64,000 nucleotides of DNA, from IMG/VR virus record IMGVR_UViG_3300037054_000148, positions 124,001-188,000 of that record, one strand, 5' to 3'. Positions within the stretch are counted from its first letter, which is position 1, and each line of letters begins with the position of its first letter. A program made the translations under genes and the position numbers. Below the pieces are notes generated by a model. That model made no database searches. It saw only the letters and a program-made list of their open reading frames with translations, and was not told the origin of the DNA. Shown piece after piece: positions 35,891-57,482 of this stretch.

Positions 35891-36577
35891 ATGGACTTCA
35901 ACTCTCAATTCGAATCTGTGCGCTCCGGACTACTCACCGAACAGACCATTCTACAACGAAACCAAGTCAAGATTGATGATCTGGAAGCTCAGAAAATCAT
36001 GAATACAAAAGCCTTGGGGGTCATAGACAAGGCCATCCAGGTCATCAGTGCAAATGGCATTGGCAAGGTGGAGTCCATCGTTTCAGATGGATTGAAACTA
36101 GTTTTTGACCAGGATCTCCAACTTGTGATTGAACGTAAGGAAGGGGCCAGGGGGGACTCCTATCGTCTCATGGTCCAGGAAGGTGATGTGATTGGCCCCC
36201 CAATCGACACGATGGGTGGGGGCGTGGTCAATGTCATCTCCTTCCTCCTCAGAGTCATCATGATCCAGCGGTTCAAATTGAATAAACTGATCATCTTGGA
36301 TGAAGCGTTCAATAACGTATCAGCGGACCGGCTCCCCAAGGTCTCAGAAATGCTCAAATCTCTCTGTGATGACCACGACTACACTATTTTATCAATAACC
36401 CAGCAGCCCTTGCTGGCGTGTGCGGCAGACCGAGTATTGAGTGTAGAGACGGGGCCGCTCCTGCGGGAGCTTACCTCTGATGAACTGGATGAATTGAGGG
36501 CAAATGGCTCAAATCAAAGTAAAGTCCGATCTGGAGATTCTGGCAAGGCTAAAAGAACTCCTTCAGCGACATCGTAA
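35891..36577 (+). CDS. SbcC/Rad50-like ABC ATPase, C-terminal half only
   Basis: Short coiled coil, signature-like MGGG, Walker B LIILDE, D-loop AFNNVS, H-loop ITQ; no Walker A. Confidence 0.85.
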   Translation: MDFNSQFESVRSGLLTEQTILQRNQVKIDDLEAQKIMNTKALGVIDKAIQVISANGIGKVESIVSDGLKLVFDQDLQLVIERKEGARGDSYRLMVQEGDVIGPPIDTMGGGVVNVISFLLRVIMIQRFKLNKLIILDEAFNNVSADRLPKVSEMLKSLCDDHDYTILSITQQPLLACAADRVLSVETGPLLRELTSDELDELRANGSNQSKVRSGDSGKAKRTPSATS

Positions 36578-36920
36578 ACGATATGTTAAGGCCAGACTCA
36601 AGCCCAAGGGCTCAAACTGTGCTCACAAAGTGTGGGACGATGCGAAAAAGGAGTGGTTCTGTGAGGGCTGTGGGTCCAGAGACCCCGAACTATGCCTCAA
36701 CCCTATGTGTTTCGAGCCTGAACTAACCAAAGAAGAACTGGCCGTGGCCTTCAGGGAGGATATCTGCAATACGCAGCGGATGCTTCGTGATTACCGGGAT
36801 ATTGCCACGCTTTTGTGGGTTCTGAGTCAGTTTGACGATCCGGCTGAGTATGAGCGGACCAAGGAAGGGTTGATTGGAATGGAGCAGCGACAGATCTCTG
36901 ACACTCCGGAGAAAAAATGA
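36504..36920 (+). CDS. Hypothetical protein with Cys cluster
   Basis: CAHK..CEGC..C..C putative zinc site. Confidence 0.6.
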   Translation: MAQIKVKSDLEILARLKELLQRHRKRYVKARLKPKGSNCAHKVWDDAKKEWFCEGCGSRDPELCLNPMCFEPELTKEELAVAFREDICNTQRMLRDYRDIATLLWVLSQFDDPAEYERTKEGLIGMEQRQISDTPEKK

Positions 36921-37012
36921 ACAAAGAGCCTATACGGATTGTCGATGTTGTGGGTATAATAGCTGTAGTGGCCATCCTCTTGGTCGCTCATTTTTTTCTG
37001 CATTGGATCTGA
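36917..37012 (+). CDS. Small membrane protein (31 aa)
   Basis: MNKEPIRIVDVVGIIAVVAILLVAHFFLHWI; overlaps the previous stop (ATGA) and ends 1 nt before the next gene. Confidence 0.45.
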   Translation: MNKEPIRIVDVVGIIAVVAILLVAHFFLHWI

Positions 37013-37013
37013 T

Positions 37014-38015
37014 ATGAAACTTCTGGTTAAAACGATCTACGGTTCTAAACTGTTCGGCACCGCCCTCCCCACTTCTGATACGGACCTAAAAGCCGTGTTC
37101 GTATGCGACATGGAGGGGTTGGTTTTCAATAAAACCGATGCGGAGAACACGGTGGAGGGAAAGGGAAGCCAGAAGGTCGAGTTCGAAGCACACCACATTT
37201 CCAACTTTTGCCGTATGCTCAAGCAGGGGCAGACTCTGGCCTACAGCATGTTGTTCACGCCAAAGGATTTGGTGGTCAGCACCTCTGATGCATGGGAGGA
37301 GTTGGTGGAGAACAAGGCTCGGCTGGTGAGCAAGAATCTTCGGCCCTTTGTCGGCTATGCTCGTTCCCAGGCTCAGAAATACAGTCTGAAGGGGGAGCGT
37401 CTGGCCACTCTTGATCATTTCATTGAGGACATTAAGATGTTCCTGGATGAAAAAGAAGTCACCCCCAATGGTCGTCTTTATGAATCCGCTTTTTGTGGGC
37501 TCATGGAGCATTACAAGGATGCTGAGGGTGCTAGACTTTGGACTGAGCACACAGCCAACATGGACGTTCGGCATATCGAGATCTGTGGCAAGAGTTTCGG
37601 TGAGACTACCCCTCTGAAGTTGTGGGTAACACCCCTGATGGAGCTTCGCAGTCGCTACGGGGGCCGCTCCCAACAGGCCAAAGAGGACAAGGGCATTGAT
37701 TTGAAGGCCATGTATCATGCGGTTCGGATCACAAGTGAGATGAACGAAATCCTCACCACTGGTAGTCTCACATACCCTAGGCCAGAGGCCCCACTGCTCA
37801 TGGATATTCGCAATGGCAAGTTGACGAATCGTGAGGTTGGTGATATCATCGACCGTCTCATCTGTACGGGTGACGAGTTGTTTGAAACCTCCACTCTTCG
37901 GGATAAACCTGATGCTGAGTGGCTGGATGACTGGCAGCTTCGCACTCAAGGTGACGCAGCCTTCTGGGCTTGGAGTAATCGAAATGCCATGGTGAGGCCC
38001 AATGCACGTTCCTGA
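37014..38015 (+). CDS. Nucleotidyltransferase (Pol beta superfamily, YcgL/RlaP-like)
   Basis: YGSKLFGTALPTSDTDLKAVF (GS..xDxD motif) and C-terminal KAMYHAVR..E..TG.LT.PR..LL.IR.G typical of the family. Confidence 0.85.
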   Translation: MKLLVKTIYGSKLFGTALPTSDTDLKAVFVCDMEGLVFNKTDAENTVEGKGSQKVEFEAHHISNFCRMLKQGQTLAYSMLFTPKDLVVSTSDAWEELVENKARLVSKNLRPFVGYARSQAQKYSLKGERLATLDHFIEDIKMFLDEKEVTPNGRLYESAFCGLMEHYKDAEGARLWTEHTANMDVRHIEICGKSFGETTPLKLWVTPLMELRSRYGGRSQQAKEDKGIDLKAMYHAVRITSEMNEILTTGSLTYPRPEAPLLMDIRNGKLTNREVGDIIDRLICTGDELFETSTLRDKPDAEWLDDWQLRTQGDAAFWAWSNRNAMVRPNARS

Positions 38016-38181
38016 TCCCGTAGAACTCTCAGAGGCGCGGATCGACCGGCTCATGGCCTTGTTTGTCGATGAACATACCTGCATGGAGTGTGGAAAGCAC
38101 GTAGACTACGAGTTGTACTGTATGTCACCACAAGGGGATGGCCCGTGCGTTTGCATGGAATGCGCGGGGGTTAGCGAGTAG
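38002..38181 (+). CDS. Small zinc-finger protein (59 aa)
   Basis: Own translation: MHVPDP..TCMECGKH..CVCMECAGVSE; fills the gap between neighbours. Confidence 0.6.
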   Translation: MHVPDPVELSEARIDRLMALFVDEHTCMECGKHVDYELYCMSPQGDGPCVCMECAGVSE

Positions 38182-38184
38182 TCT

Positions 38185-38916
38185 ATGGGTTTATACTTAC
38201 AAGACGCATGGTGGAACGACCTTAACGAATTGAGGTCCAGGACAGAGAAGCTGTATGAGAAAATAGGTCGTGATATGTGGCAAGTCACGGCTGAAAAAAT
38301 GATTGCGCTTCGAGGCTGGAAAATCAAGGAGTCTGAGGTCATTCCAGTTTTGCAGGAATTGGGAGCGTATTATGTCCCCAAGAAAATGATTCCTGGCCCC
38401 ATGTTCGTGTTCCCCAAGGTGGATGCGGCGGGGCATACCACTAGTGCTCAGACAAAGCCTCTCCACGACTTGTTTGGCCCCGGTAAGTATCATACACTAG
38501 GGGTGAGTCAGAAAGTCTTTCTAGGCCCTACCTGGATAGGGAATACAGATGAGACGCTGGAGAAGATCCTACGGCTAAAATCGGTCACACTGGCAGAGGG
38601 TCCGTTTGATTTGGTGGCCGCGAAGATCCTGGCCCCCCTCCTCCCTATTATGTCTTCCCTCACCAAGTCTATTGGAGAGAAGCATGTCGCGTATTTGAAG
38701 ATCCTTGGAGTTCAGCATCTCTACCTGTTGTTTGATCATGATGAGGCTGGTGAAAAATCTAAAATCATTCTGAGTAAAATTCTGGACATTCCGGTAGAGG
38801 CGATTGGTGATTGCCCAGGAGACGATCCTTCTGGGGCGTTAAAGACTAAAGGTACAAAAGATGCTCTCCGTCGAGTATTAAAGACCATAGAAGAGGATCA
38901 TGAACATGATGATTGA
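38185..38916 (+). CDS. DNA primase catalytic (Toprim) domain protein
   Basis: VTLAEGPFDLVA..SSLTKSIGEKHVAYLK..LYLLFDHDEAG..DDP matches DnaG Toprim; lacks the zinc-binding domain. Confidence 0.82.
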   Translation: MGLYLQDAWWNDLNELRSRTEKLYEKIGRDMWQVTAEKMIALRGWKIKESEVIPVLQELGAYYVPKKMIPGPMFVFPKVDAAGHTTSAQTKPLHDLFGPGKYHTLGVSQKVFLGPTWIGNTDETLEKILRLKSVTLAEGPFDLVAAKILAPLLPIMSSLTKSIGEKHVAYLKILGVQHLYLLFDHDEAGEKSKIILSKILDIPVEAIGDCPGDDPSGALKTKGTKDALRRVLKTIEEDHEHDD

Positions 38917-39274
38917 CTCCATCCCTTTGCTTAGAGGAGCCCTCTATAAGGTCTTCAAACACCGTGACACAGCGGAGATGATGGATGTATTTATCTCCGG
39001 AGAGTGTGGTCGCTATTGGATTTATGACCTCACTTTGGAGGATGGAACCGTTACCCCGTTTATCTACTATTCTCTCCAAGATGGAGGAGGCTGGCTCAAT
39101 ACGGGCTGCTCCTATACAGATTTTGTAGCTGCGGTGGACCAAATCATTTCCACTTGGCCTCTGTCTGAGGGTATCAAAACAATTCTTGAAAATGAAAAAT
39201 CCAGGCTTGCAAAATTGATGCAAGACAGTATCAGTAATAGCAAGCCTGATTCACTGCCCAAGGAGGCAAAATGA
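38900..39274 (+). CDS. Hypothetical protein
   Basis: ~124-aa ORF overlapping both neighbours. Confidence 0.6.
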   Translation: MNMMIDSIPLLRGALYKVFKHRDTAEMMDVFISGECGRYWIYDLTLEDGTVTPFIYYSLQDGGGWLNTGCSYTDFVAAVDQIISTWPLSEGIKTILENEKSRLAKLMQDSISNSKPDSLPKEAK

Positions 39275-39423
39275 ACAACGTAGCGAAGTTTTTTTACTCG
39301 GTCGGTGGGGTGGCGGTCGTCACTCTCGGCTCCTGGCTCCTCAATTTCGGACTCATCCATGGCCTTATCGCGGGTGTGATCCTCTGCATCGGAGCCCACA
39401 TCTTTCTTAAGCTGAAGGGGTAA
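39271..39423 (+). CDS. Small two-helix membrane protein (50 aa)
   Basis: Own translation: MNNVAKFFYSVGGVAVVTLGSWLLNFGLIHGLIAGVILCIGAHIFLKLKG; AGGAGG RBS. Confidence 0.65.
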   Translation: MNNVAKFFYSVGGVAVVTLGSWLLNFGLIHGLIAGVILCIGAHIFLKLKG

Positions 39424-39429
39424 GTCACA

Positions 39430-40737
39430 ATGATGTTTGGTAAAGGAACATGGACCCTGCTGAAACTAGTGCAGGGTGATGGGGGTGTGACCCCATTGGA
39501 AGCCTTCAAGACAGCGTTTGAAGCCGCTGGGTCTCGCTATATTCCCCTTGTGGCCATTAGCGAGGCTATCCACGAGAAGTCTTCCACGATTGGCCTCGCT
39601 CCCTTTTCTCAGCCCCGCATGGGGGATCTGGAAGAGATCGAGTTCTACGTGGACAAGGCGGCAAAGGACTTCAAATCAGAAGATACGGAGTGTTTTATCA
39701 ATAACCAGACCAACCTCCGTGAATGGGAGATGGTCGATGGGGAGCTTCTTTCGGGGCAGATTCATGTCCCCCTGGACCCTTTCTGGGAGCCAAGTTTTGA
39801 TCAGTGGCAGTTCTCCCCTGGTGTTTACGGTATGTGGGTAATGATGTTCGAGTATATCGACGCGATGGATGTGAACAGCAAGAAAGAGCATCTGGCCTAC
39901 AATTACGGTGCCCCTTTCAAGTTCCAGTCTGCGGATATCAAGAAGCAGATCACCGAACAGGTGGAGGATATCAACACCTTCGTTCGCAAGCACCATCAGG
40001 TGGTGATTGACTTCAATATGGGCTACATCTGGATTAGTAGTGGGGCAAAGGCAATTCTTGAACCCGTCATGACCTTGCTGGATGAAATGGGCCTGATTTT
40101 TGAAACCCCCACTGATTTGGTGGGAGACATCAACGCAGATGACGTTTCTGAGGCTCTGGAGACGCTGTACAACGCTTCCGTGATCAAGGATGATGTGGTG
40201 CGCCGTCTGGAAGAGTTCAAGCTCCACGGAGCCGATGGGGTTGAACCAGACTCCAACGCAGTGATGGAGAAGATCCTGAAGGCTTATTGTGCATTCAGCG
40301 AAATTCAGGGGTTCCATGTCGGCATGTCCGCGCCATTGGCCCTTTTTCTGGATCCCCGCTTCGTCTCACCCACAGCAGCCAGGAGCACCTACGAGGTGAC
40401 AGAGCTTCTCAACTCGCATGAGTCGGCACGGGTAGCAGTCGCAGATTTGACGTTCTGTCATTACACTGATCGGATTGCCAAGAACGGAGAACCCAGGAAG
40501 TTTCTGGAGAAGCTGTTCAGCATTCAGGCATCCCCTGTGTTATTCCATAAGGATATTCCAGGGCTTCGAGTCTGTGGTTTGAATATCGATAACTACAGAC
40601 GGATGATCAAGGTTCATATCAAAGCCACTGGTAATGCCCCAACGATTGCGGAATACTGGAAGATGAGTCACGACTCCATGAAGGAATCGGTGTTCACTTA
40701 CTACTCCGTGCTGAAGGACATCAAAGAATCCAGGTAA
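39430..40737 (+). CDS. Hypothetical protein, weak resemblance to RdgC
   Basis: 435 aa with GC3-rich codons; HHQVVIDFNMGYIWISSGAKAILE recalls RdgC. Tentative. Confidence 0.35.
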   Translation: MMFGKGTWTLLKLVQGDGGVTPLEAFKTAFEAAGSRYIPLVAISEAIHEKSSTIGLAPFSQPRMGDLEEIEFYVDKAAKDFKSEDTECFINNQTNLREWEMVDGELLSGQIHVPLDPFWEPSFDQWQFSPGVYGMWVMMFEYIDAMDVNSKKEHLAYNYGAPFKFQSADIKKQITEQVEDINTFVRKHHQVVIDFNMGYIWISSGAKAILEPVMTLLDEMGLIFETPTDLVGDINADDVSEALETLYNASVIKDDVVRRLEEFKLHGADGVEPDSNAVMEKILKAYCAFSEIQGFHVGMSAPLALFLDPRFVSPTAARSTYEVTELLNSHESARVAVADLTFCHYTDRIAKNGEPRKFLEKLFSIQASPVLFHKDIPGLRVCGLNIDNYRRMIKVHIKATGNAPTIAEYWKMSHDSMKESVFTYYSVLKDIKESR

Positions 40738-40762
40738 TAGATAGTAGGAAGAGGGAGCACTG

Positions 40763-41794
40763 TTGAATTTCTGGGCACCGGTATCGCTGAATCAAATTGT
40801 GGGCAACACTAGATCATTGGAGTTGCTTAGAGCGATCCTGGAGAACCGGGATCGTGCTCCCTCCTGCTATGTGTTAGACGGGCTGAATGGAGTCGGGAAG
40901 AACGCCATGGCTAAGCTGTTTCTCCATGAGTTGTTTCCCGATGTCAAACCTAAAGTTGTCCAGCCTGAATTTTTCACACAAACGCTACAACAGGAAGACC
41001 TGGACGAGTATACTTGTCTGATTTGGGATCATGCGGAGCGGCTATCCACCGAACAGGCGGATCAACTTTGCGCTTATTTGGATCGATCAGATGTGAAATC
41101 GGTTTCGGTGTTCCTCTGTGTTAATTACAACAAGGTGCATAAAGGGCTCAGGGCCAGGGCCTTACGAATTCCTTGCTTGAAGCCAAGTCGAGCGGATCTG
41201 GTTGGTCTGCTTGGCTCCATTTGCGCGAGTCACCATCTTAACTTTGAGCTAGAGGCGCTTAACCTCATAGCTGCCCGAAGTTCAGATACCCCTTCACGAG
41301 CTATTCTAGACCTTCAGGCTATTTCAGTGATGGGAGGGGTAACAACTAAGACGGTGTGTAAATTGCAAGTAAATATTGAGGAGCAAGCCATCCAGCTTCT
41401 AACTAATATTGATCATCCGGATATCATGAAAATGGCTAGTTTGATTAAGGATATGCACCCCATGGAGGAGCTTATCGATGCTTTATTTGAAGTATATTCG
41501 ACAGCTTTTTATGATAGTACAAAATCTCTTGGGGTTATTGCCGAAAAACTGAGTAATAATAAAAGGGTGGGAGACATTTTCATTAAATGGAAATCTGTTG
41601 TGGCTCCTCCCTCCTCAGCGTTGTTTATTCTCATAAAAGAACTAGTAGATTCAAGAAAAGCAGTGGAAATGCCAGTTTTCATCTCCTCCCCTTCTCCAAA
41701 AAAGGAGGTCCAACGGGCTCCCATTGCCACGGAGGAAAGTTGGAACAAAATTATTTCTGAAGCGAGTAATATCGGTGATTCTTCAATACGGTGA
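40763..41794 (+). CDS. Clamp-loader AAA+ subunit (DnaX/RFC-like)
   Basis: WAPVSLNQIVGN, YVLDGLNGVGKN, LIWDHAERLS, sensor/lid PSRAILDLQ. Confidence 0.8.
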   Translation: MNFWAPVSLNQIVGNTRSLELLRAILENRDRAPSCYVLDGLNGVGKNAMAKLFLHELFPDVKPKVVQPEFFTQTLQQEDLDEYTCLIWDHAERLSTEQADQLCAYLDRSDVKSVSVFLCVNYNKVHKGLRARALRIPCLKPSRADLVGLLGSICASHHLNFELEALNLIAARSSDTPSRAILDLQAISVMGGVTTKTVCKLQVNIEEQAIQLLTNIDHPDIMKMASLIKDMHPMEELIDALFEVYSTAFYDSTKSLGVIAEKLSNNKRVGDIFIKWKSVVAPPSSALFILIKELVDSRKAVEMPVFISSPSPKKEVQRAPIATEESWNKIISEASNIGDSSIR

Positions 41795-42872
41795 TATCAA
41801 AAAGCTCAAAGGACTCAAGTGGTATATCCTTGAAGTCAGATCAGAGCGAACAGTAGAGAACGTAATTCGTCGTGTTGGTAAGACCATGCCTACTATATTT
41901 AAGGACGGAGGGTCTTGTGAGGTGTTTGTTCCGATAGAGGACCGAGATCTCAATTTGTTTAGCCTATCCACCTCCTCCTATGTGTTTCTCCGTTCTGATC
42001 GAAAGAAAGAATTACAGAAGTTCAAAGGGGTCACAGGTGTGGTAGGGATCCTCTGTGAGGGGGAGCAGCAGCGGATTGATAAGGCCCTGATGGTGGAGGA
42101 TGACTACGTTCAGGAATTAATCAAGATGACAGAGGAGAAGTTTATGAAGAGCCCAGAGTCCATACAGGTCGGCTCCTTTGTTCGTATTCTGGATGGTTTG
42201 GATAAAGGGTTCTGTGGGCATGTATCTCGCATAGATCGAGGCTACGCCCTGATCCGGGTTGAGCTTAAAACTAGACAGATGTTCATTGATACTCCTCTGC
42301 ACAATCTCAAAGATTTGAGTTTTGTGCCACCCAACTCAAGAGTGTTTTACTACTCTGACTTAGTGGACGAGTATGTGAAGGATTACAGTGATGAGGCCAT
42401 CATGACCCTAGCTAAGGATTTGGAGTTTGTGATGGAGGTGACTGAACCCCTCCCCTCTGATGAACCAGATGAAAAGAAAGTCAAGTATGGTCGGCAGAAG
42501 ACCGTTACGGCCATGACAAAGAAATTGATATTCAGCGGCATCAAAGACCCAAAGGTCATAATTAAAGAAGCATTGGCAGCCATTGAATCAAGTGACATCA
42601 AAAAACCGAAGAGTGCGTTTATCTTCTATTCAATCCTTAAACAGGCCATCATGGAGACCCTGTTCAAAGATGATAGTAGGATCAAAACTTATAAAGATGT
42701 GGTCAAGTATTACGGGGATTCTTACCGTTTTTCTCCAAAAATGATCGCTGAATTGGATGAACATTCGATCCTATCTCCAAAAAGCGAGACCTCGGATAAA
42801 TCGAATCAGCACTCTACAGTAATAAAAATCAAACTGACCAAGGAGTCAAAATGTCAAACACCACCGGAATAG
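41775..42872 (+). CDS. NusG-family transcription factor (NGN + KOW) with a ~200-aa C-terminal extension
   Basis: KWYILEV, EVFVP, SYVFL, GVVGIL (NGN); IQVGSFVRILDGLDKGFCGHV (KOW). ORF is open from 41724. Confidence 0.85.
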   Translation: MILQYGDIKKLKGLKWYILEVRSERTVENVIRRVGKTMPTIFKDGGSCEVFVPIEDRDLNLFSLSTSSYVFLRSDRKKELQKFKGVTGVVGILCEGEQQRIDKALMVEDDYVQELIKMTEEKFMKSPESIQVGSFVRILDGLDKGFCGHVSRIDRGYALIRVELKTRQMFIDTPLHNLKDLSFVPPNSRVFYYSDLVDEYVKDYSDEAIMTLAKDLEFVMEVTEPLPSDEPDEKKVKYGRQKTVTAMTKKLIFSGIKDPKVIIKEALAAIESSDIKKPKSAFIFYSILKQAIMETLFKDDSRIKTYKDVVKYYGDSYRFSPKMIAELDEHSILSPKSETSDKSNQHSTVIKIKLTKESKCQTPPE

Positions 42873-43933: not shown

Positions 43934-43985
43934 TCGGAGTAGTGGGCTACCCGTTTCTCTGTTTGTAGCGGAACAGGTAACTCTC

Positions 43986-44873: not shown

Positions 44874-45018
44874 TGTATTTTTAACACTGAGTCAGAATCG
44901 TAGTTTTATGCGAGTTCCTCAACAACATAAAAGTAAATTTTGGCCTTAATAAACTGAATATTCAGTACCTAGAATAGGTGAGGAACTTCCCCCTTTTTGA
45001 TATCATAGGAGACGCAAC

Positions 45019-45525: not shown

Positions 45526-45536
45526 TCGAGGTCAAT

Positions 45537-45812: not shown

Positions 45813-45851
45813 CAAAACGCAGTATTAGTAGAGCAGGTAGAAGGAGTTTGG

Positions 45852-47246: not shown

Positions 47247-47291
47247 AACCAGCTAGTTTACCACTACCAGCTTCTCTTGAAAGGGGACACA

Positions 47292-47793: not shown

Positions 47794-47947
47794 AGATATT
47801 GAAGACCAGATGGACGCAGCGATTGATCAAAAAGATCATAAGGAAATGAGAAAGTGCCGCCATGGGATCAGCAAACATATCGAATCCAGCGTTAAGCTCA
47901 GGATTTCTGATGAGGTGGAAGATCCCCCATCCTGGAAATACGAGTAA
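47768..47947 (+). CDS. Small hypothetical protein (59 aa)
   Basis: Own translation: MTQRPKKVEDIEDQ..WKYE; AAGGAG RBS. Confidence 0.55.
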   Translation: MTQRPKKVEDIEDQMDAAIDQKDHKEMRKCRHGISKHIESSVKLRISDEVEDPPSWKYE

Positions 47948-47955
47948 TACGTAAG

Positions 47956-49911: not shown

Positions 49912-49914
49912 TAA

Positions 49915-50715: not shown

Positions 50716-51022
50716 CCTTAAAGTTGGGGATGTGGACTACGGACGAGGATCTGAACGATTCGTCTCGCTACGTGGGGAGATCCCTGAAGGCCAGGAAGGT
50801 ATCCCTATCAATGACTACGATGAGATCTTGAAAAGGGTTTTAGATCTTCAATTAGAGGCATGGGAAGCAGTGCAGGGCAGCCGGTATGTGGGAGGGGTCG
50901 TGAAGGCTCCGTTGTTCAAGGATTTGATCGCCATAGGCCGAAAGCGCACCGAACGAGTGAAACAATTTTTGACTGAAAGAGGCGAAGTAGATGTTACCGA
51001 TATTGAATCAACTGAAAGCTGA
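50681..51022 (+). CDS. Hypothetical protein (start may be 50708)
   Basis: ~105-113-aa ORF in an operon run. Confidence 0.6.
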   Translation: MTNMTVTAVMVSLKVGDVDYGRGSERFVSLRGEIPEGQEGIPINDYDEILKRVLDLQLEAWEAVQGSRYVGGVVKAPLFKDLIAIGRKRTERVKQFLTERGEVDVTDIESTES

Positions 51023-52451
51023 GACAGTCCTGGAGGGAACGGGGCTACTTGAGAAGGTGGAAAAACTCCGCTCAACCTTCACTTATAAGTCGTCTGAAGA
51101 GGCTTACTCTTTTGATGACTATTACTTGAGGCTGCTGAAAGAGGCAGATGGGGTTGAACAGATCACCCTCCTGTCCTCCGTAGCTCCTGGCACGGCTCAG
51201 TCTTATTTGGTGCAGCTTACCCAATCTCTGCAATTGGTCACTGATAAAATTGAATCTATCCACAGTCGAGCTTTATTTTTCCTGGGGAAGGTCCGTGCGG
51301 CTATCCACAATAAGGATGGGCTGGAAGCTGCATTCACCGTATGGTACCAGATTGCCATCACCGATGTGCTAAAGGCACATGACCTCAAGTTCACAGCCTC
51401 TGTCTGTAAGGCTTTGGCCGAGTCTGAGTTCACTCGTCTGATTGGTGAAGAGGTGGTCCTGGAAGGCATGGAGGATGCGATCAGTATGCTGATCGAACAT
51501 CTGAAAAGTGCTAAGAAATTGGCCATGGAAAAGTATAAACTCGGCACCGAACAGGCCAATGCCTCTCTCCTACGTATGCCACCCAGTCAGGGCTTAACGG
51601 AGAATGAAGACCCATACCCTCTGCTAAAGCAACGATACGGCTCCCTCACAGAGGAGCCCCAGAAGCCTAAATACGATGATGACGATGAGTCCGAAAACGG
51701 ACTCCCTGCTGAAGAGGGTGACCCTAACTACGTGGAAAGACGCGAGTTTGCTGGACACCCTTTGAGTGACAAGGTAATCAAATTCATTCAGGGCACCGTC
51801 GAACAACCGGAAGTCGGTGTGGTGCTGGGCGGAGAACTTGAAGAAGTGGCGAAGAAGTGGCGTGAAGAGCAGTTGGACGCAGCCCAAGAAGCTGAGGACA
51901 AAGCACTCCTTCAGATGCTAGTTTCTAAGGAACTCACTCCCTTGGTGGAGATGCTGGCTCAGCTTCCAGATACCGGCTTCACTCATAGCGAAGATTCAAA
52001 TGCGGATGCAGAATATGTAGCTGCTCATCCAGAGACCCGGACACCATTGGTGGTGAAGCGGCGTGATTTTGATGAGGCTCTAGAAGTTCAAATAGAGCCC
52101 TCTCCAAACTTGGCCCCCGGCCCCGCCTTTGATGTTGATAAATTTGATGAGGTGCCCTCGGCTCTACCCGCAGATAAAATCATTCACGATCCCTTTGTTG
52201 GAGACGTAAAGGTGGTTCAGGGTGAGGATGGCCCCGCGCTCGTAAAAGAAAAGGGAGAGAAGGCTATTCAGCCCCAGCCTAAGCCAAAAACCAAGCCCAA
52301 ATACGATGATGAAGATGATGAAGATGGTATCTCTGTGCCCTCTTCTACCCCGGAGTCCCTAGCCCCGGAACTAGTAAGTCCAGTAGCACCAGCGGAAGTT
52401 CAACCGGTCAAAAAAGATCGAAGAAAGATCACTTTTGACGACTCATTCTGA
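50991..52451 (+). CDS. Helical protein with long acidic disordered C-terminus (possible recombination mediator)
   Basis: Coiled/helical N-terminal half; lies upstream of SSB, RuvC and RecA. Function is inferred from context only. Confidence 0.45.
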   Translation: MLPILNQLKAETVLEGTGLLEKVEKLRSTFTYKSSEEAYSFDDYYLRLLKEADGVEQITLLSSVAPGTAQSYLVQLTQSLQLVTDKIESIHSRALFFLGKVRAAIHNKDGLEAAFTVWYQIAITDVLKAHDLKFTASVCKALAESEFTRLIGEEVVLEGMEDAISMLIEHLKSAKKLAMEKYKLGTEQANASLLRMPPSQGLTENEDPYPLLKQRYGSLTEEPQKPKYDDDDESENGLPAEEGDPNYVERREFAGHPLSDKVIKFIQGTVEQPEVGVVLGGELEEVAKKWREEQLDAAQEAEDKALLQMLVSKELTPLVEMLAQLPDTGFTHSEDSNADAEYVAAHPETRTPLVVKRRDFDEALEVQIEPSPNLAPGPAFDVDKFDEVPSALPADKIIHDPFVGDVKVVQGEDGPALVKEKGEKAIQPQPKPKTKPKYDDEDDEDGISVPSSTPESLAPELVSPVAPAEVQPVKKDRRKITFDDSF

Positions 52452-52480
52452 GTATCAATTAGAGAGCAAGGAGCACACAT

Positions 52481-53281
52481 ATGGCGAACAAGCCAAAGTT
52501 TGACGAAGACGAAGAGCTAGACCTTAAGGCCGGATCGAAGGCCGGTGCGGGTCAAAAAGGAACCGCTGCTGCGGGAAAGAAGACCCTGGAGAATGAGGAA
52601 GAACTCGACTGCGACTGGGGTGACACCGAACTGATGAAGAAGAAGGATCCGATGCCACGGGTCAAGCCAGAGAAGGGCAAGGCCGTTCGCTTCGCCATTC
52701 TTCCCTTCATCAAGCCGAAGAAGGCGTTTAACCACTATATCGACAAGAAAGGCACTTTCCGTTGCCTCTCCACTGAAGAGAACGAGGGGGTCTGCTGCAC
52801 CTCTGGTCTGGCTGGCAATGCCAATCTGGCCATTGTTGCTCTGGTGGTCAAATACACCAACTGCGATCCCAAGACCGGCAAATACGGCCTGGATAAGGAC
52901 GGTCGAAAGATCGTGGAAACTGACTGGGAGGTGGGCCATGTCAATCTCAGCCGCACCAACTACACGGCCATCAACCGCATGATGGAGGATGAAGACGCCG
53001 CCAACGGGAATCCGGAGACCGTCTATGACTTCGATATCATCATGACTCACAATGAGACCACTGGTATCGGTTATACCCTCACCCGTGCATCTCGTACGCC
53101 ACGCTACCGCAAGGATCCAGAAATGGTCGCGGCCATCGAAGAAGCCGTTCAGCCTCTCATGGACGGCAAGCTCCTCACCGCAAGGCTGGGTCGCAAAATC
53201 AACGCCATCGAGTGGAAGGCCCTGCTCTCCGGCATCTCCGGAGCGAACGATGATGACGCTTCGGATAACGGCGATCTGTAA
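52481..53281 (+). CDS. Single-stranded DNA-binding protein (gp32-like)
   Basis: VRFAILP..HY..FRC..CC zinc-like segment, acidic C-terminal tail (DDDASDNGDL), strongly biased codons, own terminator. Confidence 0.7.
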   Translation: MANKPKFDEDEELDLKAGSKAGAGQKGTAAAGKKTLENEEELDCDWGDTELMKKKDPMPRVKPEKGKAVRFAILPFIKPKKAFNHYIDKKGTFRCLSTEENEGVCCTSGLAGNANLAIVALVVKYTNCDPKTGKYGLDKDGRKIVETDWEVGHVNLSRTNYTAINRMMEDEDAANGNPETVYDFDIIMTHNETTGIGYTLTRASRTPRYRKDPEMVAAIEEAVQPLMDGKLLTARLGRKINAIEWKALLSGISGANDDDASDNGDL

Positions 53282-53300
53282 GTAGCCCAAGAGTTTGACT

Positions 53301-53330
53301 CGGGGAGCCTCGGGGCTCCCCGTTTTATTT
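53301..53330 (+). terminator. Rho-independent terminator
   Basis: CGGGGAGCC-TCGG-GGCTCCCCG followed by TTTTATTT. Confidence 0.88.
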
Positions 53331-53340
53331 TGGAGAAGCA

Positions 53341-54156
53341 GTGGCACCACGTAAACCGAAGAAAACGTTCGCTGAAAAGATTACTTTTCCAGCTACATCC
53401 ACTATCAAAAAATGGCTAGTCATCGGACTTGACCCTTCTCTGAGCCGCACCGGTTTTGCCTTTGCTAAGATGGTCAGCCTCTCCTCCCAATGGTTGAGTA
53501 TTGGCTCTCTTAAACCTGATGATACCTCTCTTCCCATATGGCTCAGATCTCAACAGATAGCCAGTGCGATTGGAGAGATGATGCTACACTGGCAAAATAC
53601 TGCTGTGACCGGTAGCCTGGAACCAACTGGTTTGATTGTCTGTATGGAAGTCCCAACCCCCAGAAACGACTATCTCAATATTCTTTCCAAGACTATTCAT
53701 GCCCACCTTCTCCCTCTCACGGGTAAACTGTTCTCTGAAGTGCATGTGCTTCAGGTAAACGCAGCTACGATGAGATCCAACATGGGTCTGACTGCTACGG
53801 GAGACAACAAATGGGAGAACGTGCGGAAAAGTCAGGAGTTCGCTGATCCGGCAACCTATCCAGGCATTGATTCAGACTCATGCGATGCAATTCTCTTTGC
53901 TGAATATGGTAAGATGGTGGCGGAATTGTTGACTCCCGAAACCAATTTGGTTGGTGAATCCCCAATACTGCTGAGCCTCTGTGACAACACTCCCGTAGTG
54001 AAAGGCAAGGGCAAGAGAGCAAAAATTGTGACCAAAGGTATCCTTCACAATCCGGCATATTGGTACACCTACACCCCCACCGAATACAGTATTAGCTTAA
54101 AAGACGCTACCGTCCCGCCCAAGAAGCGGTTGCAAAAAATTACCATAACCATCTAA
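53341..54156 (+). CDS. ruvC: RuvC-like Holliday junction resolvase
   Basis: VIGLDPSLSRTGFA, VCMEVP, DSCDAILFA. Confidence 0.85.
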   Translation: MAPRKPKKTFAEKITFPATSTIKKWLVIGLDPSLSRTGFAFAKMVSLSSQWLSIGSLKPDDTSLPIWLRSQQIASAIGEMMLHWQNTAVTGSLEPTGLIVCMEVPTPRNDYLNILSKTIHAHLLPLTGKLFSEVHVLQVNAATMRSNMGLTATGDNKWENVRKSQEFADPATYPGIDSDSCDAILFAEYGKMVAELLTPETNLVGESPILLSLCDNTPVVKGKGKRAKIVTKGILHNPAYWYTYTPTEYSISLKDATVPPKKRLQKITITI

Positions 54157-54164
54157 GGAGAACC

Positions 54165-55409
54165 ATGGCTGTAAAGCGCGTTAAACACACTAAGGAAGCA
54201 GGAGAAGTTCCTGATTCCAAAGCAGCATTCCTGGAGGCCCTAGACGGCTTCGGGGAAGACCCCACAATTCAGAAGATGGAGGTCCAGGAGACGTTCGTTC
54301 CTATGGGGTCTATTATCCTTGACCACGTGCTGCAACTGAAGGGCATCCCCGGTGGGGGCCGAGTCATTCAGATTCACGGTAAGGAGCATGGGGGCAAGTC
54401 CACCCTCTGTTACAACATCGTCAAGTCTTATCAGCGGCTGACCGGCAAGGCTGCGGCCATCTTCGATTTTGAGGGCACCAGCACCCCCGAATACTTCAAA
54501 TCTAACGGGGTTAATACCGACCGTGATGCTCTAGTGGTATTCAAGAACAACTCCATTGAGGCCGCAATCCAGAAGTCCATCGTCCTGATGAAGGCCGGAG
54601 TGAAAGTGTTCATTTACGACTCTGTACCTCGTATGAAGTCCATGGTGGATGAGAAAGAAATCATGAATGGCAAGGCTTTCAAGAACACCGTTGGTGCTCA
54701 CGCCAAAACCATGAACATGTTCTTTGACATTCTCCTCCCCTACGCCCAGCACTATGACTGCGTTTTGATCATGGTCAATCAGATCAGAGCTAGGATTGAT
54801 GGATCACGCGAGGGCCAATCGGCTGCGAAATACAGCACCATCACCAATCTCAACTACGTCCTACCCGGAGGATTCGCCATGCGATTCATCCCCTCTCTGA
54901 CCATTGAAGTCAACGTGGCCAAGGCCCTTCGTGCGGGTGGTGGTGAGTCTGATTGGGACATCGAGCCAGGAGAGAACAAGGGGAACAACTATGTGGCGAC
55001 CCGCATCAACGTTCGTGTCTTGAAGAACAAGGTCACGATGGGTGGGTATCGGGCTGGGGTGCTCTACCTCCGTTCCGGCTTGGGGCTGGATGACAATATC
55101 AGCATCCGTGAATTGGCCCATCACTATAAGCTCATCTCCTATGTGGGGCGCAAGTATGTGATCGGATTAGAGTCTGACCCGATCATCATCTATGACTCTA
55201 AGGATGCGGCAATTCGAGATCTGGTGATTGAGCAGAACCCTATAGTTCTTAGTAAACTGCGCGAACTAGTGGTTGCGGCGGTTGAAAATGACCAACACGG
55301 GTTCTCCATCCAGCCCTCTGAGGAAGATTTGGCCTCCTCTGACGAGGACTTCTATCAGAAGATCTCTGCTAAGGTGGCATTTGATGATGAGGACCAGGAT
55401 CTATCATGA
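54165..55409 (+). CDS. recA: RecA/UvsX recombinase
   Basis: GRVIQIHGKEHGGKST (Walker A), VFIYDSV (Walker B), LIMVNQIR, PGGFAMRF, VLKNKV. Confidence 0.93.
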   Translation: MAVKRVKHTKEAGEVPDSKAAFLEALDGFGEDPTIQKMEVQETFVPMGSIILDHVLQLKGIPGGGRVIQIHGKEHGGKSTLCYNIVKSYQRLTGKAAAIFDFEGTSTPEYFKSNGVNTDRDALVVFKNNSIEAAIQKSIVLMKAGVKVFIYDSVPRMKSMVDEKEIMNGKAFKNTVGAHAKTMNMFFDILLPYAQHYDCVLIMVNQIRARIDGSREGQSAAKYSTITNLNYVLPGGFAMRFIPSLTIEVNVAKALRAGGGESDWDIEPGENKGNNYVATRINVRVLKNKVTMGGYRAGVLYLRSGLGLDDNISIRELAHHYKLISYVGRKYVIGLESDPIIIYDSKDAAIRDLVIEQNPIVLSKLRELVVAAVENDQHGFSIQPSEEDLASSDEDFYQKISAKVAFDDEDQDLS

Positions 55410-55969
55410 TTATCGACTCCAACAACCTCCTCCTCAAGACCTTTTGGTTCCTGGCTCTTTTGGGTTCCACCCTCTTCATGGCTTCAAATCTCGCTTACAG
55501 CCCTGCCGCCTCTCAGTACTGGATGTGGGCCGGAGGGGTTATCCTGGGGGCCTATTTGACTGGGTTCCTCGGTGTGCTAACCTATACTGTGGCCCATTCC
55601 GGAGGGGTCGATCAAGCTCTTCGAAAGATGGGCACACTGGAGAAGTTCGTAGACGCTCTAGCTGAGCCATTCCCATGGGCCAATAAGGCGTTCTGGTTCA
55701 CCATTTTCTACTACGCCTCCCTCCTTATTGGCTGGCCCTTATTGCACGGAGCCTTGCTTTGCATCTCAGTCTCTCTCCTTGCTACCACCGTCCTATGCGT
55801 CCTTCGCAATCTTCACCTCATCAGAGCCTTCCTTCGTCTCTCGATCAAGGGGGTAATGATTGAGAGTGCGGTCAAGGATTTAATCTCTCACATTATGGCC
55901 TCTGAAGCAGAGAAAGAATGTGATAAAGAAGGCTGCTCCTGCAAGACCCCACCTGAAGAGGAATCATGA
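55406..55969 (+). CDS. Integral membrane protein (about 4 TM helices)
   Basis: Multiple long hydrophobic segments. Confidence 0.7.
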   Translation: MIIDSNNLLLKTFWFLALLGSTLFMASNLAYSPAASQYWMWAGGVILGAYLTGFLGVLTYTVAHSGGVDQALRKMGTLEKFVDALAEPFPWANKAFWFTIFYYASLLIGWPLLHGALLCISVSLLATTVLCVLRNLHLIRAFLRLSIKGVMIESAVKDLISHIMASEAEKECDKEGCSCKTPPEEES

Positions 55970-57198
55970 AATTTCGGCTTGTAGGCAGGGATTTCCAGTC
56001 TTGGAAACACTTCGATTTGAATGTCAACGGATTCACCATCATCGTTGGCAGTTCAAATCGAGGGAAGTCCGCGATTGTCAGATCCCTGCGTGGTATTCTG
56101 AGGAACCAAGTACAAGATGCTTTCATCCGACATGGCCAGAAAGCTGTTGAGCTTAAGCTCGAAGTAGAAAATGGCCCCACGGCTGTCCTGACCAGAGGGA
56201 AGACTACCACCTACAAAGTCAATGGGGAGGACTTCGCTAAGCTGAATGGAGATGTGCCCCAACTGATCAAAGAACTAAAGCTGGGCGAAATCACCATTGG
56301 TTCTGCTAAGTTGGACCCCACATTCGCAGGGCAGTTTGACAGCCAGTTCATGATGAACCTCTCCCCCAGTGAGTTAAACTCTGTGTTCGGTCTGTTCAGC
56401 AATACGGAGCAATTGAACCAAGGTAAAAAGGCCATCAATCTAAATAACGCAGAGATCAACTCTCAGGCTAAGATGCTGGCTCTGGAGGTTCAAGCCGGTC
56501 ATACGAAAATTGCTGAGATTAGCTCCGTGCTAGGGGCATTTGAATCCCTAAAGCCCAGGCACGATGACACGCGACAGAAAATTACCACGGCTCAAACCGT
56601 ACAAACTTTGTTGAATCAAAGAATTGTGCAATGGAGCCGGGTTGTAACTCTGGAAAGCATAAATCGTATCTCTCCCCCGTCTACCCAAAAAGTGACGAAG
56701 GCCCACAAAGTCCACACGCTCCTATCTCACAAGATGCAGACTTCAAGTCGTGTCAGAGTCCTTCGCCAATCCTCCCAGGTAGCCCCACCTTCAACCGAAC
56801 TGGTTTCCCGCTACCTCCGCCTAGGGAAAAGCCTCAGACATGTCCAGAGGCTCCAGGAGCATGTTGCAATCGGCTCTGAGGTGATGGTTGCGGCCAGACC
56901 GATCAAATGGGGGCTGCTGGTTCGACAATGGAGTCTGTGGAAGGAATATTTTCCTCTTCGAAAGCGGCTCGAAGCAGCCCCATCCGTAGAGCGGATGGAT
57001 GTTAGTAAACCGGAGCATGATCTTATGGTTCTCAGGCTTCTAGCTGCATGGCCTAAGATGCGCACTCTCTTGGCTTCGCGCAAGGAGGACGTATCCGTAG
57101 TTAATCGTCAACTAGCCGACCTCCACAATCAGCTTCATGAACTTACCAAAGACACCATCTCGTGCCCGAAATGCGGGTATCAATTCATCAAGGAGTAA
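55966..57198 (+). CDS. SbcC/Rad50-like ABC ATPase, N-terminal half ending in a zinc hook
   Basis: FQSW, IVGSSNRGKSAIVR (Walker A), Q-loop GQFD, coiled coil, terminal CPKCG; no Walker B. Confidence 0.88.
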   Translation: MKFRLVGRDFQSWKHFDLNVNGFTIIVGSSNRGKSAIVRSLRGILRNQVQDAFIRHGQKAVELKLEVENGPTAVLTRGKTTTYKVNGEDFAKLNGDVPQLIKELKLGEITIGSAKLDPTFAGQFDSQFMMNLSPSELNSVFGLFSNTEQLNQGKKAINLNNAEINSQAKMLALEVQAGHTKIAEISSVLGAFESLKPRHDDTRQKITTAQTVQTLLNQRIVQWSRVVTLESINRISPPSTQKVTKAHKVHTLLSHKMQTSSRVRVLRQSSQVAPPSTELVSRYLRLGKSLRHVQRLQEHVAIGSEVMVAARPIKWGLLVRQWSLWKEYFPLRKRLEAAPSVERMDVSKPEHDLMVLRLLAAWPKMRTLLASRKEDVSVVNRQLADLHNQLHELTKDTISCPKCGYQFIKE

Positions 57199-57200
57199 TC

Positions 57201-57482
57201 GTGGCCATAGCCGAAGAAATCCAGGATCTGAACAAACGTATCTCTGGTTTGGAGAAGAAGCAGGAAGAGGTCAAGCGGACCCTAGCCGTTGAAGAGCACA
57301 AACTATCAGAACTCCAGGCACAACTCAAGGACGAGGGGTATGACGTTTCCAAAATGTCTGATGCAGAGATTGAAGCTCTGATGGATAAACTAGCAGAGAG
57401 CATCGAAACTGAGATGGAAAGACTCAAGGGAATCATCGAAGAGGCCGAAAAGCAATATGAGAAGTTCCAAGAGCTTCGATAA
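57201..57482 (+). CDS. Coiled-coil protein (possible middle segment of the split SbcC)
   Basis: Pure heptad protein with AGGAG RBS, directly after the SbcC N-half. Confidence 0.65.
   Translation: MAIAEEIQDLNKRISGLEKKQEEVKRTLAVEEHKLSELQAQLKDEGYDVSKMSDAEIEALMDKLAESIETEMERLKGIIEEAEKQYEKFQELR

What the first reader, a model, noticed from the sequence alone, without database searches (positions are those of the whole stretch)
35891..57482. Rad50/SbcC natively split at the zinc hook into two or three genes, with halves 20 kb apart
Seen: 55966-57198 carries Walker A, the Q-loop and a coiled coil, and ends at CPKCG. 57201-57482 is a pure coiled coil. 35891-36577 carries a short coil, the signature MGGG, Walker B and the D-loop, with Gln replacing the switch His (ITQ). 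SbcD/Mre11 is at 58928. Each piece has its own RBS and no intein termini. Established: Rad50/SbcC/T4 gp46 are single chains that fold back at the CXXC hook. Inference: a heterotrimeric ATPase assembled via antiparallel coils, with the halves under separate regulation (the C-half RBS lies in a hairpin).
Basis: partly seen in the sequence, partly recalled or inferred. Interest (0 to 1): 0.66.

Follow-up and report, generated by a model that had tools for sequence, protein, structure and literature searches.

The report
Phage Rad50 split after zinc hook
A 314-kb soil phage encodes its Rad50/SbcC DNA-end-processing ATPase as three separate genes, cut right after the zinc hook, and the same cut recurs in thousands of phage relatives; I found no published description of it.

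Summary
ORF 55966-57198 is a Rad50/SbcC N lobe (Walker A, Q-loop) plus a helical rod that ends in CPKCG seven residues before the stop. ORF 35891-36577 is a short helix plus the Rad50 C lobe (GGG signature, Walker B DE, and Gln where the switch His normally sits). ORF 57201-57482 is a small helical protein, and SbcD lies at 58928.

Family profiles find exactly one N-half and one C-half in the whole 313.6-kb genome. All pieces are under strong purifying selection.

The split is not private to this phage:
- In 80 of 80 related viral loci the C lobe is a stand-alone ORF of 190-304 aa.
- N-halves are separate ORFs that nearly always end in CPxCG.
- A small helical protein is found once per locus in 66 loci.
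- The best 150 of 2,528 strong database clusters are all 183-308 aa.

Cultured examples are Tunturiibacter phage Tunturi_5, Microbacterium phage Magritte and Bacillus prophage phBC6A51.

A complex prediction supports binding (0.74 against a best control of 0.04). It joins the two lobes into one head and pairs N-half 150-199 antiparallel with C-half 3-57.

Separate regulation of the halves is not shown. My verdict is a real, widespread variant of Rad50/SbcC that I could not find described.

The parts
55966..57198 (+). N-half of the split Rad50/SbcC-like ATPase (410 aa). It has the N lobe with Walker A (residues 28-35, nt 56047-56070) and Q-loop Q123 (nt 56332-56334), then a helical rod, then the hook.
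   Evidence: phrog_16465 3.9e-13. Family profile A2 matches Rad50 N lobe 5f3w/3aux at 1.4e-18. AF2 model has mean pLDDT 75 with lobe 1-145 and helices 148-269, 279-337 and 347-394. Best Foldseek hits are Rad50 and SMC heads. dN/dS is 0.12.
56413..56562 (+). N-half residues 150-199, the base of the rod. It is predicted to pair antiparallel with the N-terminal helix of the C-half.
   Evidence: Heptad-spaced contacts with C-half residues 3-57. Pairs 168:28 and 185:14 have an expected error of 1.3 A.
56566..57150 (+). Distal rod (residues 201-395), built of tandem units of about 37 aa with Pro-containing linkers at 237/238, 274/275, 312 and 349.
   Evidence: The lag-37 self-similarity score is 0.237; the maximum of 300 shuffles is -0.089. 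Lag 38 stands out in Tunturi_5 and lag 47 in phBC6A51. AF2 confidence is low here.
57163..57177 (+). Zinc-hook motif CPKCG (residues 400-404), seven residues before the stop codon.
   Evidence: C400 is present in 37/37, P401 in 34/37 and C403 in 36/37 family N-halves. A2 profile positions 299-369 match the Rad50 hook crystals 6zff (8.4e-7) and 1l8d (5.3e-6).
57190..57195 (+). Shine-Dalgarno AAGGAG for the small ORF, lying inside the last codons of the N-half.
   Evidence: Read directly from the sequence.
57201..57482 (+). Small helical subunit (93 aa, GTG start): a helix, a conserved (E/L)G turn, then a second helix.
   Evidence: Homologues exist in Tunturi_5 (gp180) and phBC6A51 (BC1854). An iterated profile gives one hit per locus in 66 loci, 38 of them directly upstream of the C-half. 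dN/dS is 0.02-0.06. Residues 78-93 touch the C-half in the complex model.
35891..36577 (+). C-half of the split ATPase (228 aa). It has an N-terminal helix (residues 3-57, nt 35897-36061), signature GGG (nt 36215-36223), Walker B DE (nt 36299-36304) and Gln171 at the switch position (nt 36401-36403).
   Evidence: phrog_15167 2e-16. Family profile A3 matches Rad50 C lobe 3aux at 8.1e-16 and 3qkr_B at 6.7e-15. Motif counts are. dN/dS is 0.018. In the complex model it forms a shared beta-sheet with N-half residues 22-26.
35855..35897 (+). RNA hairpin enclosing the stop codon of the upstream tail-fibre gene, the GGAG and the ATG of the C-half.
   Evidence: -19.6 kcal/mol, z -2.59, equalled by 1 of 200 shuffles. 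Similar hairpins with other sequences occur in L014 and L018, weaker ones in L013 and L015, and none in L019, L020 or Tunturi_5.
58928..59944 (+). SbcD/Mre11-type nuclease (338 aa), the presumed partner.
   Evidence: Metallophos 1.4e-7 and phrog_100 SbcD-like 2.7e-7. SbcD homologues lie next to the split pieces in most related loci. dN/dS is 0.034.
54165..55409 (+). UvsX/RecA-type recombinase (context). The order UvsX - small ORF - N-half - small - ... - SbcD matches Tunturi_5 gp183-gp177.
   Evidence: RecA 1.3e-21 and phrog_97 5.2e-44. Synteny is shown.

Best explanation
This is the phage's Mre11-Rad50 (SbcCD-type) DNA-end-processing machine, with the Rad50 ATPase made from three polypeptides instead of one.

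The pieces:
- The N-half supplies the Walker A/Q-loop lobe and a rod built of about 37-aa helical repeats. Its C-terminus carries a CPKCG zinc hook.
- The C-half supplies a 55-residue helix and the signature/Walker B/switch lobe.
- A 93-aa helical protein is the third subunit.

How it is thought to work (inferred):
- The two lobes dock non-covalently into one ABC head through a shared beta-sheet.
- The C-half helix runs antiparallel along N-half 150-199 to make the base of the arm, where the C-terminal helices of SbcD would bind.
- The small protein continues upward from the N-terminus of the C-half.
- Two such heads would sandwich ATP (Walker A against GGG in trans), and two hooks would share a zinc ion, as in Rad50.
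- Gln in place of the switch His probably slows hydrolysis in this subclade.

What is shown and what is inferred:
- Shown: the motifs, the homology of each piece to the matching Rad50 part, single copy in the genome, co-conservation of the pieces, purifying selection, and the breadth of the family.
- Inferred: physical assembly (prediction only), zinc binding, ATPase and nuclease activity, and the role in recombination-dependent replication and repair.
For: Homology of each piece to the matching part of Rad50:
- The best solved-structure hits of the N-half profile are the Rad50 N lobe (1.4e-18) and Rad50 hook crystals (8.4e-7, 5.3e-6). Those of the C-half profile are the Rad50 C lobe (8.1e-16).
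- Foldseek on the N-half model returns Rad50 and SMC heads.
- The catalytic residues are invariant across the family.

Partnership of the pieces:
- The 313.6-kb genome holds one N-half and one C-half only.
- In 80 of 80 related loci the C lobe stands alone. In 51 of them a separate N-half lies within 10 kb on the same strand (one of these is fused to SbcD). In five records without a nearby N-half there is exactly one N-half elsewhere.
- The small protein occurs once per locus in 66 loci.
- SbcD is linked to the pieces in most loci, and the window shares synteny with the UvsX...SbcD module of Tunturi_5.

Function and assembly:
- dN/dS ranges from 0.02 to 0.13 for all pieces.
- Complex prediction gave a score of 0.74 against a best control of 0.04. 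That mark was reached by 58 of 80 solved complexes and 2 of 110 mismatched pairs. The runs agree in at least 92% of contacts and the partner pLDDT is at least 78. The interface is a shared sheet plus an antiparallel coil.
- PDB entries 1f2t, 1ii8 and 3qkr are Rad50 heads reconstituted from separate N and C chains. This shows that such halves can assemble in trans.
Against: - There is no experimental evidence of binding, ATPase or nuclease activity.
- The complex pass may partly reflect the model's memory of solved Rad50 heads. It also used my own alignments and three chains, unlike the calibration.
- The small protein's place along the rod was not scored. Only its last 16 residues are seen touching the C-half.
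- The rod (about 250 aa) is much longer than the small protein plus the C-half helix (about 150 aa). Across the family, rod length does not track their length (r -0.06). The arm architecture is therefore unresolved, and AF2 confidence is low for residues 269-346.
- The switch His is Gln here, so this copy could be a slow or binding-only ATPase.
- The N-half also matches a Lamassu LmuB model (2.4e-12).
Confidence: 0.8

Rival explanations
1. A two-piece enzyme only. The small helical ORF is a conserved neighbour with another role, for example a regulator or adaptor, and is not a structural part of the Rad50 arm.
For: Its sequence is generic coiled coil, and Pfam and NCBIfam give only weak coil matches. 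Its position on the rod was not scored. It is too short to complete the descending strand.
Against: It occurs once per locus in 66 loci, and in 38 it lies immediately upstream of the C-half, often with overlapping stop and start codons. It stays with the N-half when the C-half has moved away, in the window and in Tunturi_5. dN/dS is 0.02-0.06. Its C-terminal helix touches the N-terminus of the C-half in all runs.
Confidence: 0.2
2. The pieces belong to a Lamassu-like or other SMC-type conflict system (defence or inter-phage competition), not to a recombination and repair nuclease.
For: The N-half matches PADLOC LmuB PDLC03859 at 2.4e-12, with weaker hits to Old and GajA. SbcD gives faint hits to anti-phage phosphoesterase models.
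Against: All Rad50-like ATPases cross-match these models. The best solved-structure hits are Rad50 itself, including the hook. The genes sit inside the phage's own UvsX / clamp-loader / helicase / ThyX module and next to an Mre11-type nuclease. Jumbo phages nearly always carry SbcCD (PMC7824862), and this genome has no other copy.
Confidence: 0.07
3. The two halves are not partners. The C-half is an independent ABC-lobe protein, or it pairs with something else.
For: The two genes are 20 kb apart and lie in different gene modules. The C-half follows a tail-fibre gene.
Against: A lone C lobe has no Walker A and cannot bind ATP. The genome has exactly one complementary N lobe. The two are adjacent in most family members. 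The complex prediction passes, and when chain 1 is swapped the control scores 0.04.
Confidence: 0.04
4. An artefact, decay, or covalent rejoining. The candidates are a broken or mis-assembled gene, a programmed frameshift joining the N-half to the small ORF, or a split intein or trans-splicing event joining the chains.
For: The small ORF starts 2 nt after the N-half stop, in another frame.
Against: The same architecture appears in independent contigs and in cultured phages. In most relatives the small gene lies next to the C-half, not the N-half. Every piece shows strong purifying selection. Only 7 residues follow the hook, and the C-half starts with the helix, so there is no room for intein halves. 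Each ORF has its own start and RBS.
Confidence: 0.02

Closest known systems
Single-chain Rad50/SbcC with Mre11/SbcD (E. coli SbcCD, archaeal Mre11-Rad50, T4 gp46/gp47)
   Same: It has the Walker A/Q-loop N lobe, the signature/Walker B/switch C lobe, a helical arm, a CxxC zinc hook at the arm tip and a linked Mre11-type nuclease. Both halves find Rad50 as their best solved-structure relative.
   Different: The chain ends 7 residues after the hook, and the C lobe is a separate gene with only a helix of about 55 residues. A third small helical protein is conserved with them. The distal rod is made of repeats of about 37-47 aa rather than an evident two-strand coil. The signature is GGG rather than S-G-G. 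In this window the switch His is Gln.
Engineered two-chain Rad50 catalytic domains (PDB 1f2t, 1ii8, 3qkr, 1us8)
   Same: Separate N and C polypeptides assemble in trans into one ABC head. The window's halves align to chains A and B of these entries respectively.
   Different: Those are laboratory truncations that discard the arm and hook. Here the cut is natural, lies after the hook, keeps the arm, and is conserved across a large family.
Mre11::Rad50 fusion proteins (Mimivirus R555 and others; PMC3175470)
   Same: Both are architectural rearrangements of the same two-gene system in viruses. One relative here (L026) fuses SbcD to the N-half in a 707-aa ORF, while its C-half stays separate.
   Different: That case is a fusion rather than a fission. 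The paper reports Mre11/Rad50 fusions; I read only its title and abstract, and my searches found no description of a split Rad50.
Lamassu LmuB and other SMC/Rad50-like defence ATPases
   Same: They share the Rad50-like head and coiled coil. PADLOC LmuB matches the N-half at 2.4e-12.
   Different: Those model lengths (605-1,007 positions) fit single chains. To my knowledge they sit in defence islands and are not paired with an Mre11-type nuclease inside a phage replication module.

Membership tests
Rad50/SbcC (SMC-like ABC ATPase of the Mre11/SbcD complex) | N-terminal lobe with a Walker A P-loop and a Q-loop glutamine | tested here: met
   G28, G33, K34 and Q123 are invariant in 37 family N-halves. 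The profile matches the Rad50 N lobe at 1.4e-18.
Rad50/SbcC (SMC-like ABC ATPase of the Mre11/SbcD complex) | C-terminal lobe with the signature motif, Walker B D-E and the D-loop | tested here: met
   G109-G111 are present in 57-60 of 60, D137 and E138 in 60/60, and S144 in 57/60. The profile matches the Rad50 C lobe at 8.1e-16. The signature is a G-G-G variant.
Rad50/SbcC (SMC-like ABC ATPase of the Mre11/SbcD complex) | Switch (H-loop) histidine | tested here: not met
   The window has Gln171 (ITQ). His is present in 53 of 60 family members. Gln is confined to the window's subclade plus one other sequence.
Rad50/SbcC (SMC-like ABC ATPase of the Mre11/SbcD complex) | CxxC zinc hook at the tip of a long helical arm | tested here: met
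   CPKCG at residues 400-404. C400 is present in 37/37 and C403 in 36/37. The profile matches the hook crystals 6zff and 1l8d. Zinc binding itself could not be tested.
Rad50/SbcC (SMC-like ABC ATPase of the Mre11/SbcD complex) | One polypeptide whose arm is an intramolecular antiparallel coiled coil that folds back at the hook | tested here: not met
   There are three separate ORFs, and the chain ends after the hook. This holds in 80 of 80 related loci and in the best 150 database clusters.
Rad50/SbcC (SMC-like ABC ATPase of the Mre11/SbcD complex) | Genetic and physical partnership with an Mre11/SbcD phosphoesterase | tested here: inconclusive
   The genetic linkage is met: SbcD lies 1.7 kb downstream of the N-half and is linked to the pieces in most relatives. 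Physical binding was not tested, because adding SbcD would have exceeded the size limit of the single complex job.
Rad50/SbcC (SMC-like ABC ATPase of the Mre11/SbcD complex) | N and C lobes form one nucleotide-binding head | tested here: met
   This rests on prediction only: a score of 0.74 against a best control of 0.04, with a shared beta-sheet (N-half 22-26 against C-half 165-170 and 180-183) and an antiparallel coil.
Rad50/SbcC (SMC-like ABC ATPase of the Mre11/SbcD complex) | ATP-dependent control of nuclease activity on DNA ends and hairpins | not testable with these tools
   This needs biochemistry.
Split-intein or trans-spliced protein | Intein N- and C-fragments flanking the break | tested here: not met
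   There are 7 residues after the hook and none before the C-half helix. No extra domains appear in the Pfam scan.

The most novel reading that the evidence does not exclude
A very large phage family, undescribed as far as I could find, builds Rad50 from three chains cut exactly at the zinc hook, with an arm made of stackable 37-47-aa repeat modules. At least 2,528 database clusters match at E <= 1e-30, though only the best 150 were checked for length. In this phage's lineage the ATPase-completing C-half has been moved to the end of the late tail-fibre operon and is translationally coupled to it through an RBS hairpin. The nuclease machine would then become ATP-competent only late in infection. 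That would be a timing switch made possible by the split.
Probability: 0.15. Interest if true: 0.8.

Novelty: new variant of a known kind. Interest (0 to 1): 0.62.

Why it matters
How the Rad50 arm and hook communicate with the ATPase head is a long-standing question. All the models I know of assume a single chain that folds back at the hook.

A natural, strongly conserved system in which the chain stops at the hook says that covalent continuity through the hook is dispensable. In it the descending strand is supplied in trans, and only in part. It offers a small, separable set of proteins (305-520 aa, about 80 aa, and about 210 aa, plus SbcD) for dissecting arm function.

The family includes cultured phages and a Bacillus cereus prophage, so it can be studied experimentally.

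There is also a practical point for annotation. Thousands of 'ATPase', 'exonuclease' and 'chromosome segregation ATPase' ORFs in phage genomes are halves of one enzyme, and jumbo-phage surveys that look for a full-length SbcC may be misled.

Tried and rejected
Explanations tested and rejected:
- Other partner halves in the genome. Three Pfam families and both family profiles find none.
- A frameshift fusing the N-half to the small ORF. In most relatives the small gene sits beside the C-half instead.
- Pseudogene fragments. dN/dS is 0.02-0.13.
- An intein. There is no room for one.
- The small protein plus the C-half helix as the complete descending strand. Rod length varies from 147 to 356 aa in steps of about 45-50 and is uncorrelated with their length.

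Checks that gave no answer:
- Curated families. Pfam, NCBIfam and PADLOC give only sub-threshold or generic matches, and no curated family describes the split.
- Literature. Five searches found no description of a split Rad50/SbcC. The SPN3US paper speaks only of the SbcC and SbcD genes lying far apart, and of the ABC domain being 'split' within one chain.
- RNA evidence. Four metatranscriptome runs from peat, permafrost and a bioreactor hold only 150-270-nt contigs. One lies on the C-half (35891-36154) and none bridges the tail-fibre/C-half junction. They say nothing on co-transcription or timing.

Calls that failed:
- Complex prediction was busy three times before it ran.
- One search used wrong coordinates, timed out and one search had too many terms.

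Only genetic code 11 was used.
Full report
**Where the window lies.** The window is bases 124001-188000 of a 313,597-bp IMG/VR virus record that CheckV rates 100% complete. Nearly all genes are on the + strand. A structural block with tail-fibre-like ORFs runs to 35864. After it come DNA-metabolism genes: a nucleotidyltransferase, a clamp loader, a helicase, UvsX, SbcD and ThyX. The closest cultured relative is the 309-kb Tunturiibacter (Acidobacteriota) phage Tunturi_5.

**The observation.** The three ORFs are there as described.
- The N-half (55966-57198, 410 aa) has Walker A at residues 28-35 and Q123. It ends with CPKCG at residues 400-404, seven residues before the stop.
- The next ORF starts with GTG at 57201, two bases after that stop. 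An AAGGAG lies inside the last codons of the N-half.
- The C-half (35891-36577, 228 aa) has a GGG signature, Walker B D137-E138, and ITQ where relatives have (V/I)TH.
- SbcD (58928-59944) is a Metallophos / SbcD-like protein.

**What each piece is.** The window's own sequences give only weak single-sequence Pfam matches, so I built family alignments from related viral loci: A2 with 37 N-halves and A3 with 60 C-halves.
- Against all solved structures, A2's best hits are archaeal Rad50 heads over the N lobe (1.4e-18). Its last 70 positions hit the Rad50 zinc-hook crystals 6zff and 1l8d (8.4e-7, 5.3e-6).
- A3's best hits are the C lobe of the same Rad50 heads (8.1e-16).
- The AF2 model of the N-half (mean pLDDT 75) has an ABC N lobe, helices 148-269, 279-337 and 347-394, and a terminal hairpin. 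Foldseek returns Rad50 and SMC heads.

The two halves are therefore the two complementary lobes of a Rad50-type ATPase, and the break falls right after the hook.

**Are they partners?**
- The family profiles and three Pfam families find exactly one N-half and one C-half in the whole genome.
- All pieces are under strong purifying selection against close relatives. dN/dS is 0.12-0.13 for the N-half (0.026 for its lobe), 0.02-0.06 for the small ORF, 0.018 for the C-half and 0.034 for SbcD.
- The single complex job used N-half, small protein and C-half, with the C-half as the scored partner. It gave 0.74 against a best control of 0.04. That mark was reached by 58 of 80 solved complexes and 2 of 110 mismatched pairs. 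The runs agree in at least 92% of contacts and the partner pLDDT is at least 78.
- The interface is what a Rad50 head requires. N-half strand 22-26 joins C-half strands 165-170 and 180-183 in one sheet. N-half 150-199 runs antiparallel to C-half 3-57 with heptad spacing (168 with 28, 185 with 14). The last 16 residues of the small protein touch the C-half.
- This pass supports binding but does not show it. It may lean on the model's memory of solved Rad50 heads, and it used my own alignments.
- PDB entries 1f2t, 1ii8 and 3qkr are Rad50 heads assembled from separately made N and C chains. They are independent precedent that such halves associate.

**The split is a family trait.**
- Three GenBank phages carry both halves as separate genes. 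They are Tunturi_5 (gp181 and gp14, about 108 kb apart), Microbacterium phage Magritte (gp155 and gp2) and an uncultured 485-kb phage (about 8 kb apart).
- Bacillus cereus prophage phBC6A51 has them in one operon. The genes are BC1852 'SbcC' (518 aa), BC1853, BC1854 (77 aa), BC1855 'chromosome segregation ATPase' (211 aa), BC1856 and BC1857 SbcD.
- A profile-guided scan of IMG/VR gave 136 relatives. In all 80 that were kept, the C lobe is a stand-alone ORF of 190-304 aa.
- In 51 of them a separate N-half of 305-523 aa lies within 10 kb on the same strand. One of these, L026, is an SbcD::N-half fusion of 707 aa.
- Almost every N-half ends with CPxCG 8-22 residues before its stop.
- Five large records with no nearby N-half each have exactly one, 18-92 kb away.
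- An exhaustive profile search of 1.84 billion cluster representatives found 2,528 clusters at E <= 1e-30. The best 150 are all 183-308 aa and match end to end. No fused form appeared among them.
- Gene order varies (N-C-D, N-D-C, N-s-C-D), so the pieces behave as independent genes.

**The third subunit.**
- The window's 93-aa ORF aligns with Tunturi_5 gp180 and phBC6A51 BC1854. All three are a helix of about 40 residues, a conserved (E/L)G turn, and a helix of about 30 residues.
- An iterated profile restricted to small ORFs finds one hit per locus in 66 loci. In 38 it lies immediately upstream of the C-half, often overlapping its start.
- In the window and in Tunturi_5, where the C-half has moved away, the small gene stayed behind the N-half.

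I take it as a genuine third chain, with about 0.75-0.8 confidence.

**The arm is unusual.**
- The small protein plus the C-half helix (about 150 aa) cannot cover the window's 250-aa rod.
- Across 34 distinct systems, rod length runs from 147 to 356 aa in steps of roughly 45-50. It does not correlate with the length of the other two chains (r -0.06).
- The rod has a significant internal period: 37 aa here, with prolines at 237/238, 274/275, 312 and 349. The period is 38 aa in Tunturi_5 and 47 aa in phBC6A51, each beyond all 300 shuffles.
- The distal arm is thus probably a stack of helical repeat modules made by the N-half alone, not a classical two-strand coil. AF2 is unsure in this region, so the geometry is open.

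**Regulation.**
- The C-half starts 26 nt after the tail-fibre ORF.
- A -19.6 kcal/mol hairpin (z -2.6) encloses that ORF's stop codon together with the GGAG and ATG of the C-half.
- A terminator-like hairpin follows the next ORF, at 36967-36988.
- Hairpins over the RBS recur with different sequences in some relatives (L014 and L018, weaker in L013 and L015) but not in others.

This fits translational coupling to a late gene. It hints that the C-half may be made on a different schedule from the N-half and SbcD, but nothing tests it. The RNA-library contigs were too short to help.

**The Gln switch.** His occupies the switch position in 53 of 60 family members. Gln is found in the window, its three nearest relatives and one unrelated member. 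To my knowledge from ABC ATPases, this residue supports hydrolysis, so a slower ATPase is a reasonable but untested inference.

**Comparison and novelty.**
- The system works like Mre11-Rad50/SbcCD and meets most defining features of Rad50.
- It fails the single-chain fold-back architecture, and in this clade it lacks the switch His.
- PHROGs already holds the pieces as separate families: 'exonuclease' (phrog_16465) and 'ATPase' (phrog_15167). GenBank annotators named them piecemeal.
- Neither curated family libraries nor five full-text searches describe a split Rad50/SbcC. The nearest published architectural variant found is the opposite case, Mre11::Rad50 fusions (PMC3175470).
- The absence from the held library does not prove that nobody has noted it.

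I class it as a new variant of a known kind. It is real, widespread, and open to experiment in cultured phages.

Noticed in passing
window 56566-57150 (N-half residues 201-395); also L001 and L010: The Rad50-like arm has a tandem repeat of about 37 aa with proline linkers (38 aa in Tunturi_5, 47 aa in phBC6A51). Across the family, arm length changes in steps of about 45-50 aa.
   Followed up: partly
window 36504-36920 (+), and 36967-36988: A 138-aa Cys-rich ORF overlaps the 3' end of the C-half by 74 nt. It is conserved only in the window's clade (L011-L021) and matches no family. A terminator-like hairpin with a T-run follows it.
   Followed up: partly
window 1634-2188 (-), 10504-11193 (+), 22779-23675 (-): Three GIY-YIG homing-endonuclease ORFs are scattered through the structural block. 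Two of them are on the otherwise nearly empty minus strand.
   Followed up: partly
L026 7087-9210: A relative encodes SbcD fused to the N-half in one 707-aa ORF, while its small protein and C-half remain separate genes.
   Followed up: no
G005 C1 27995-28927 (L095): In a complete 136-kb relative, the hook-bearing end of the N-half matches only after a TGA. This could be a further split, a frameshift or a read-through.
   Followed up: no
window 55406-55969 (+): A 187-aa ORF lies between UvsX and the N-half and looks hydrophobic and membrane-like from its sequence. Its stop overlaps the N-half start (ATGA), and it matches no family. The SPN3US paper notes small membrane proteins next to T4 gene 47 and next to the SPN3US SbcC gene.
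   Followed up: no
window 34347-35864 (+): The tail-fibre-like ORF just upstream of the C-half carries a long collagen-like G-X-Y run, including repeated GIQ triplets.
   Followed up: no
window 57684-58931 (+): Three ORFs lie between the small subunit and SbcD: a 208-aa ORF with weak dCMP-deaminase matches, a 93-aa ORF, and a 120-aa hemerythrin-domain protein (2.2e-6). Tunturi_5 has unrelated small ORFs in the same slot.
   Followed up: no
L016 and L011 (one contig, IMGVR_UViG_3300014168_000003): In this close relative the C-half is 100% identical to the window's but the N-half is only 81% identical. The N-half, mainly its rod, evolves much faster, or the region is mosaic.
   Followed up: partly
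window 33700-36154: Short contigs from peat, permafrost and bioreactor metatranscriptome libraries match the tail-fibre genes and the start of the C-half at 95-100% identity. This is consistent with a cold, acidic soil habitat.
   Followed up: partly
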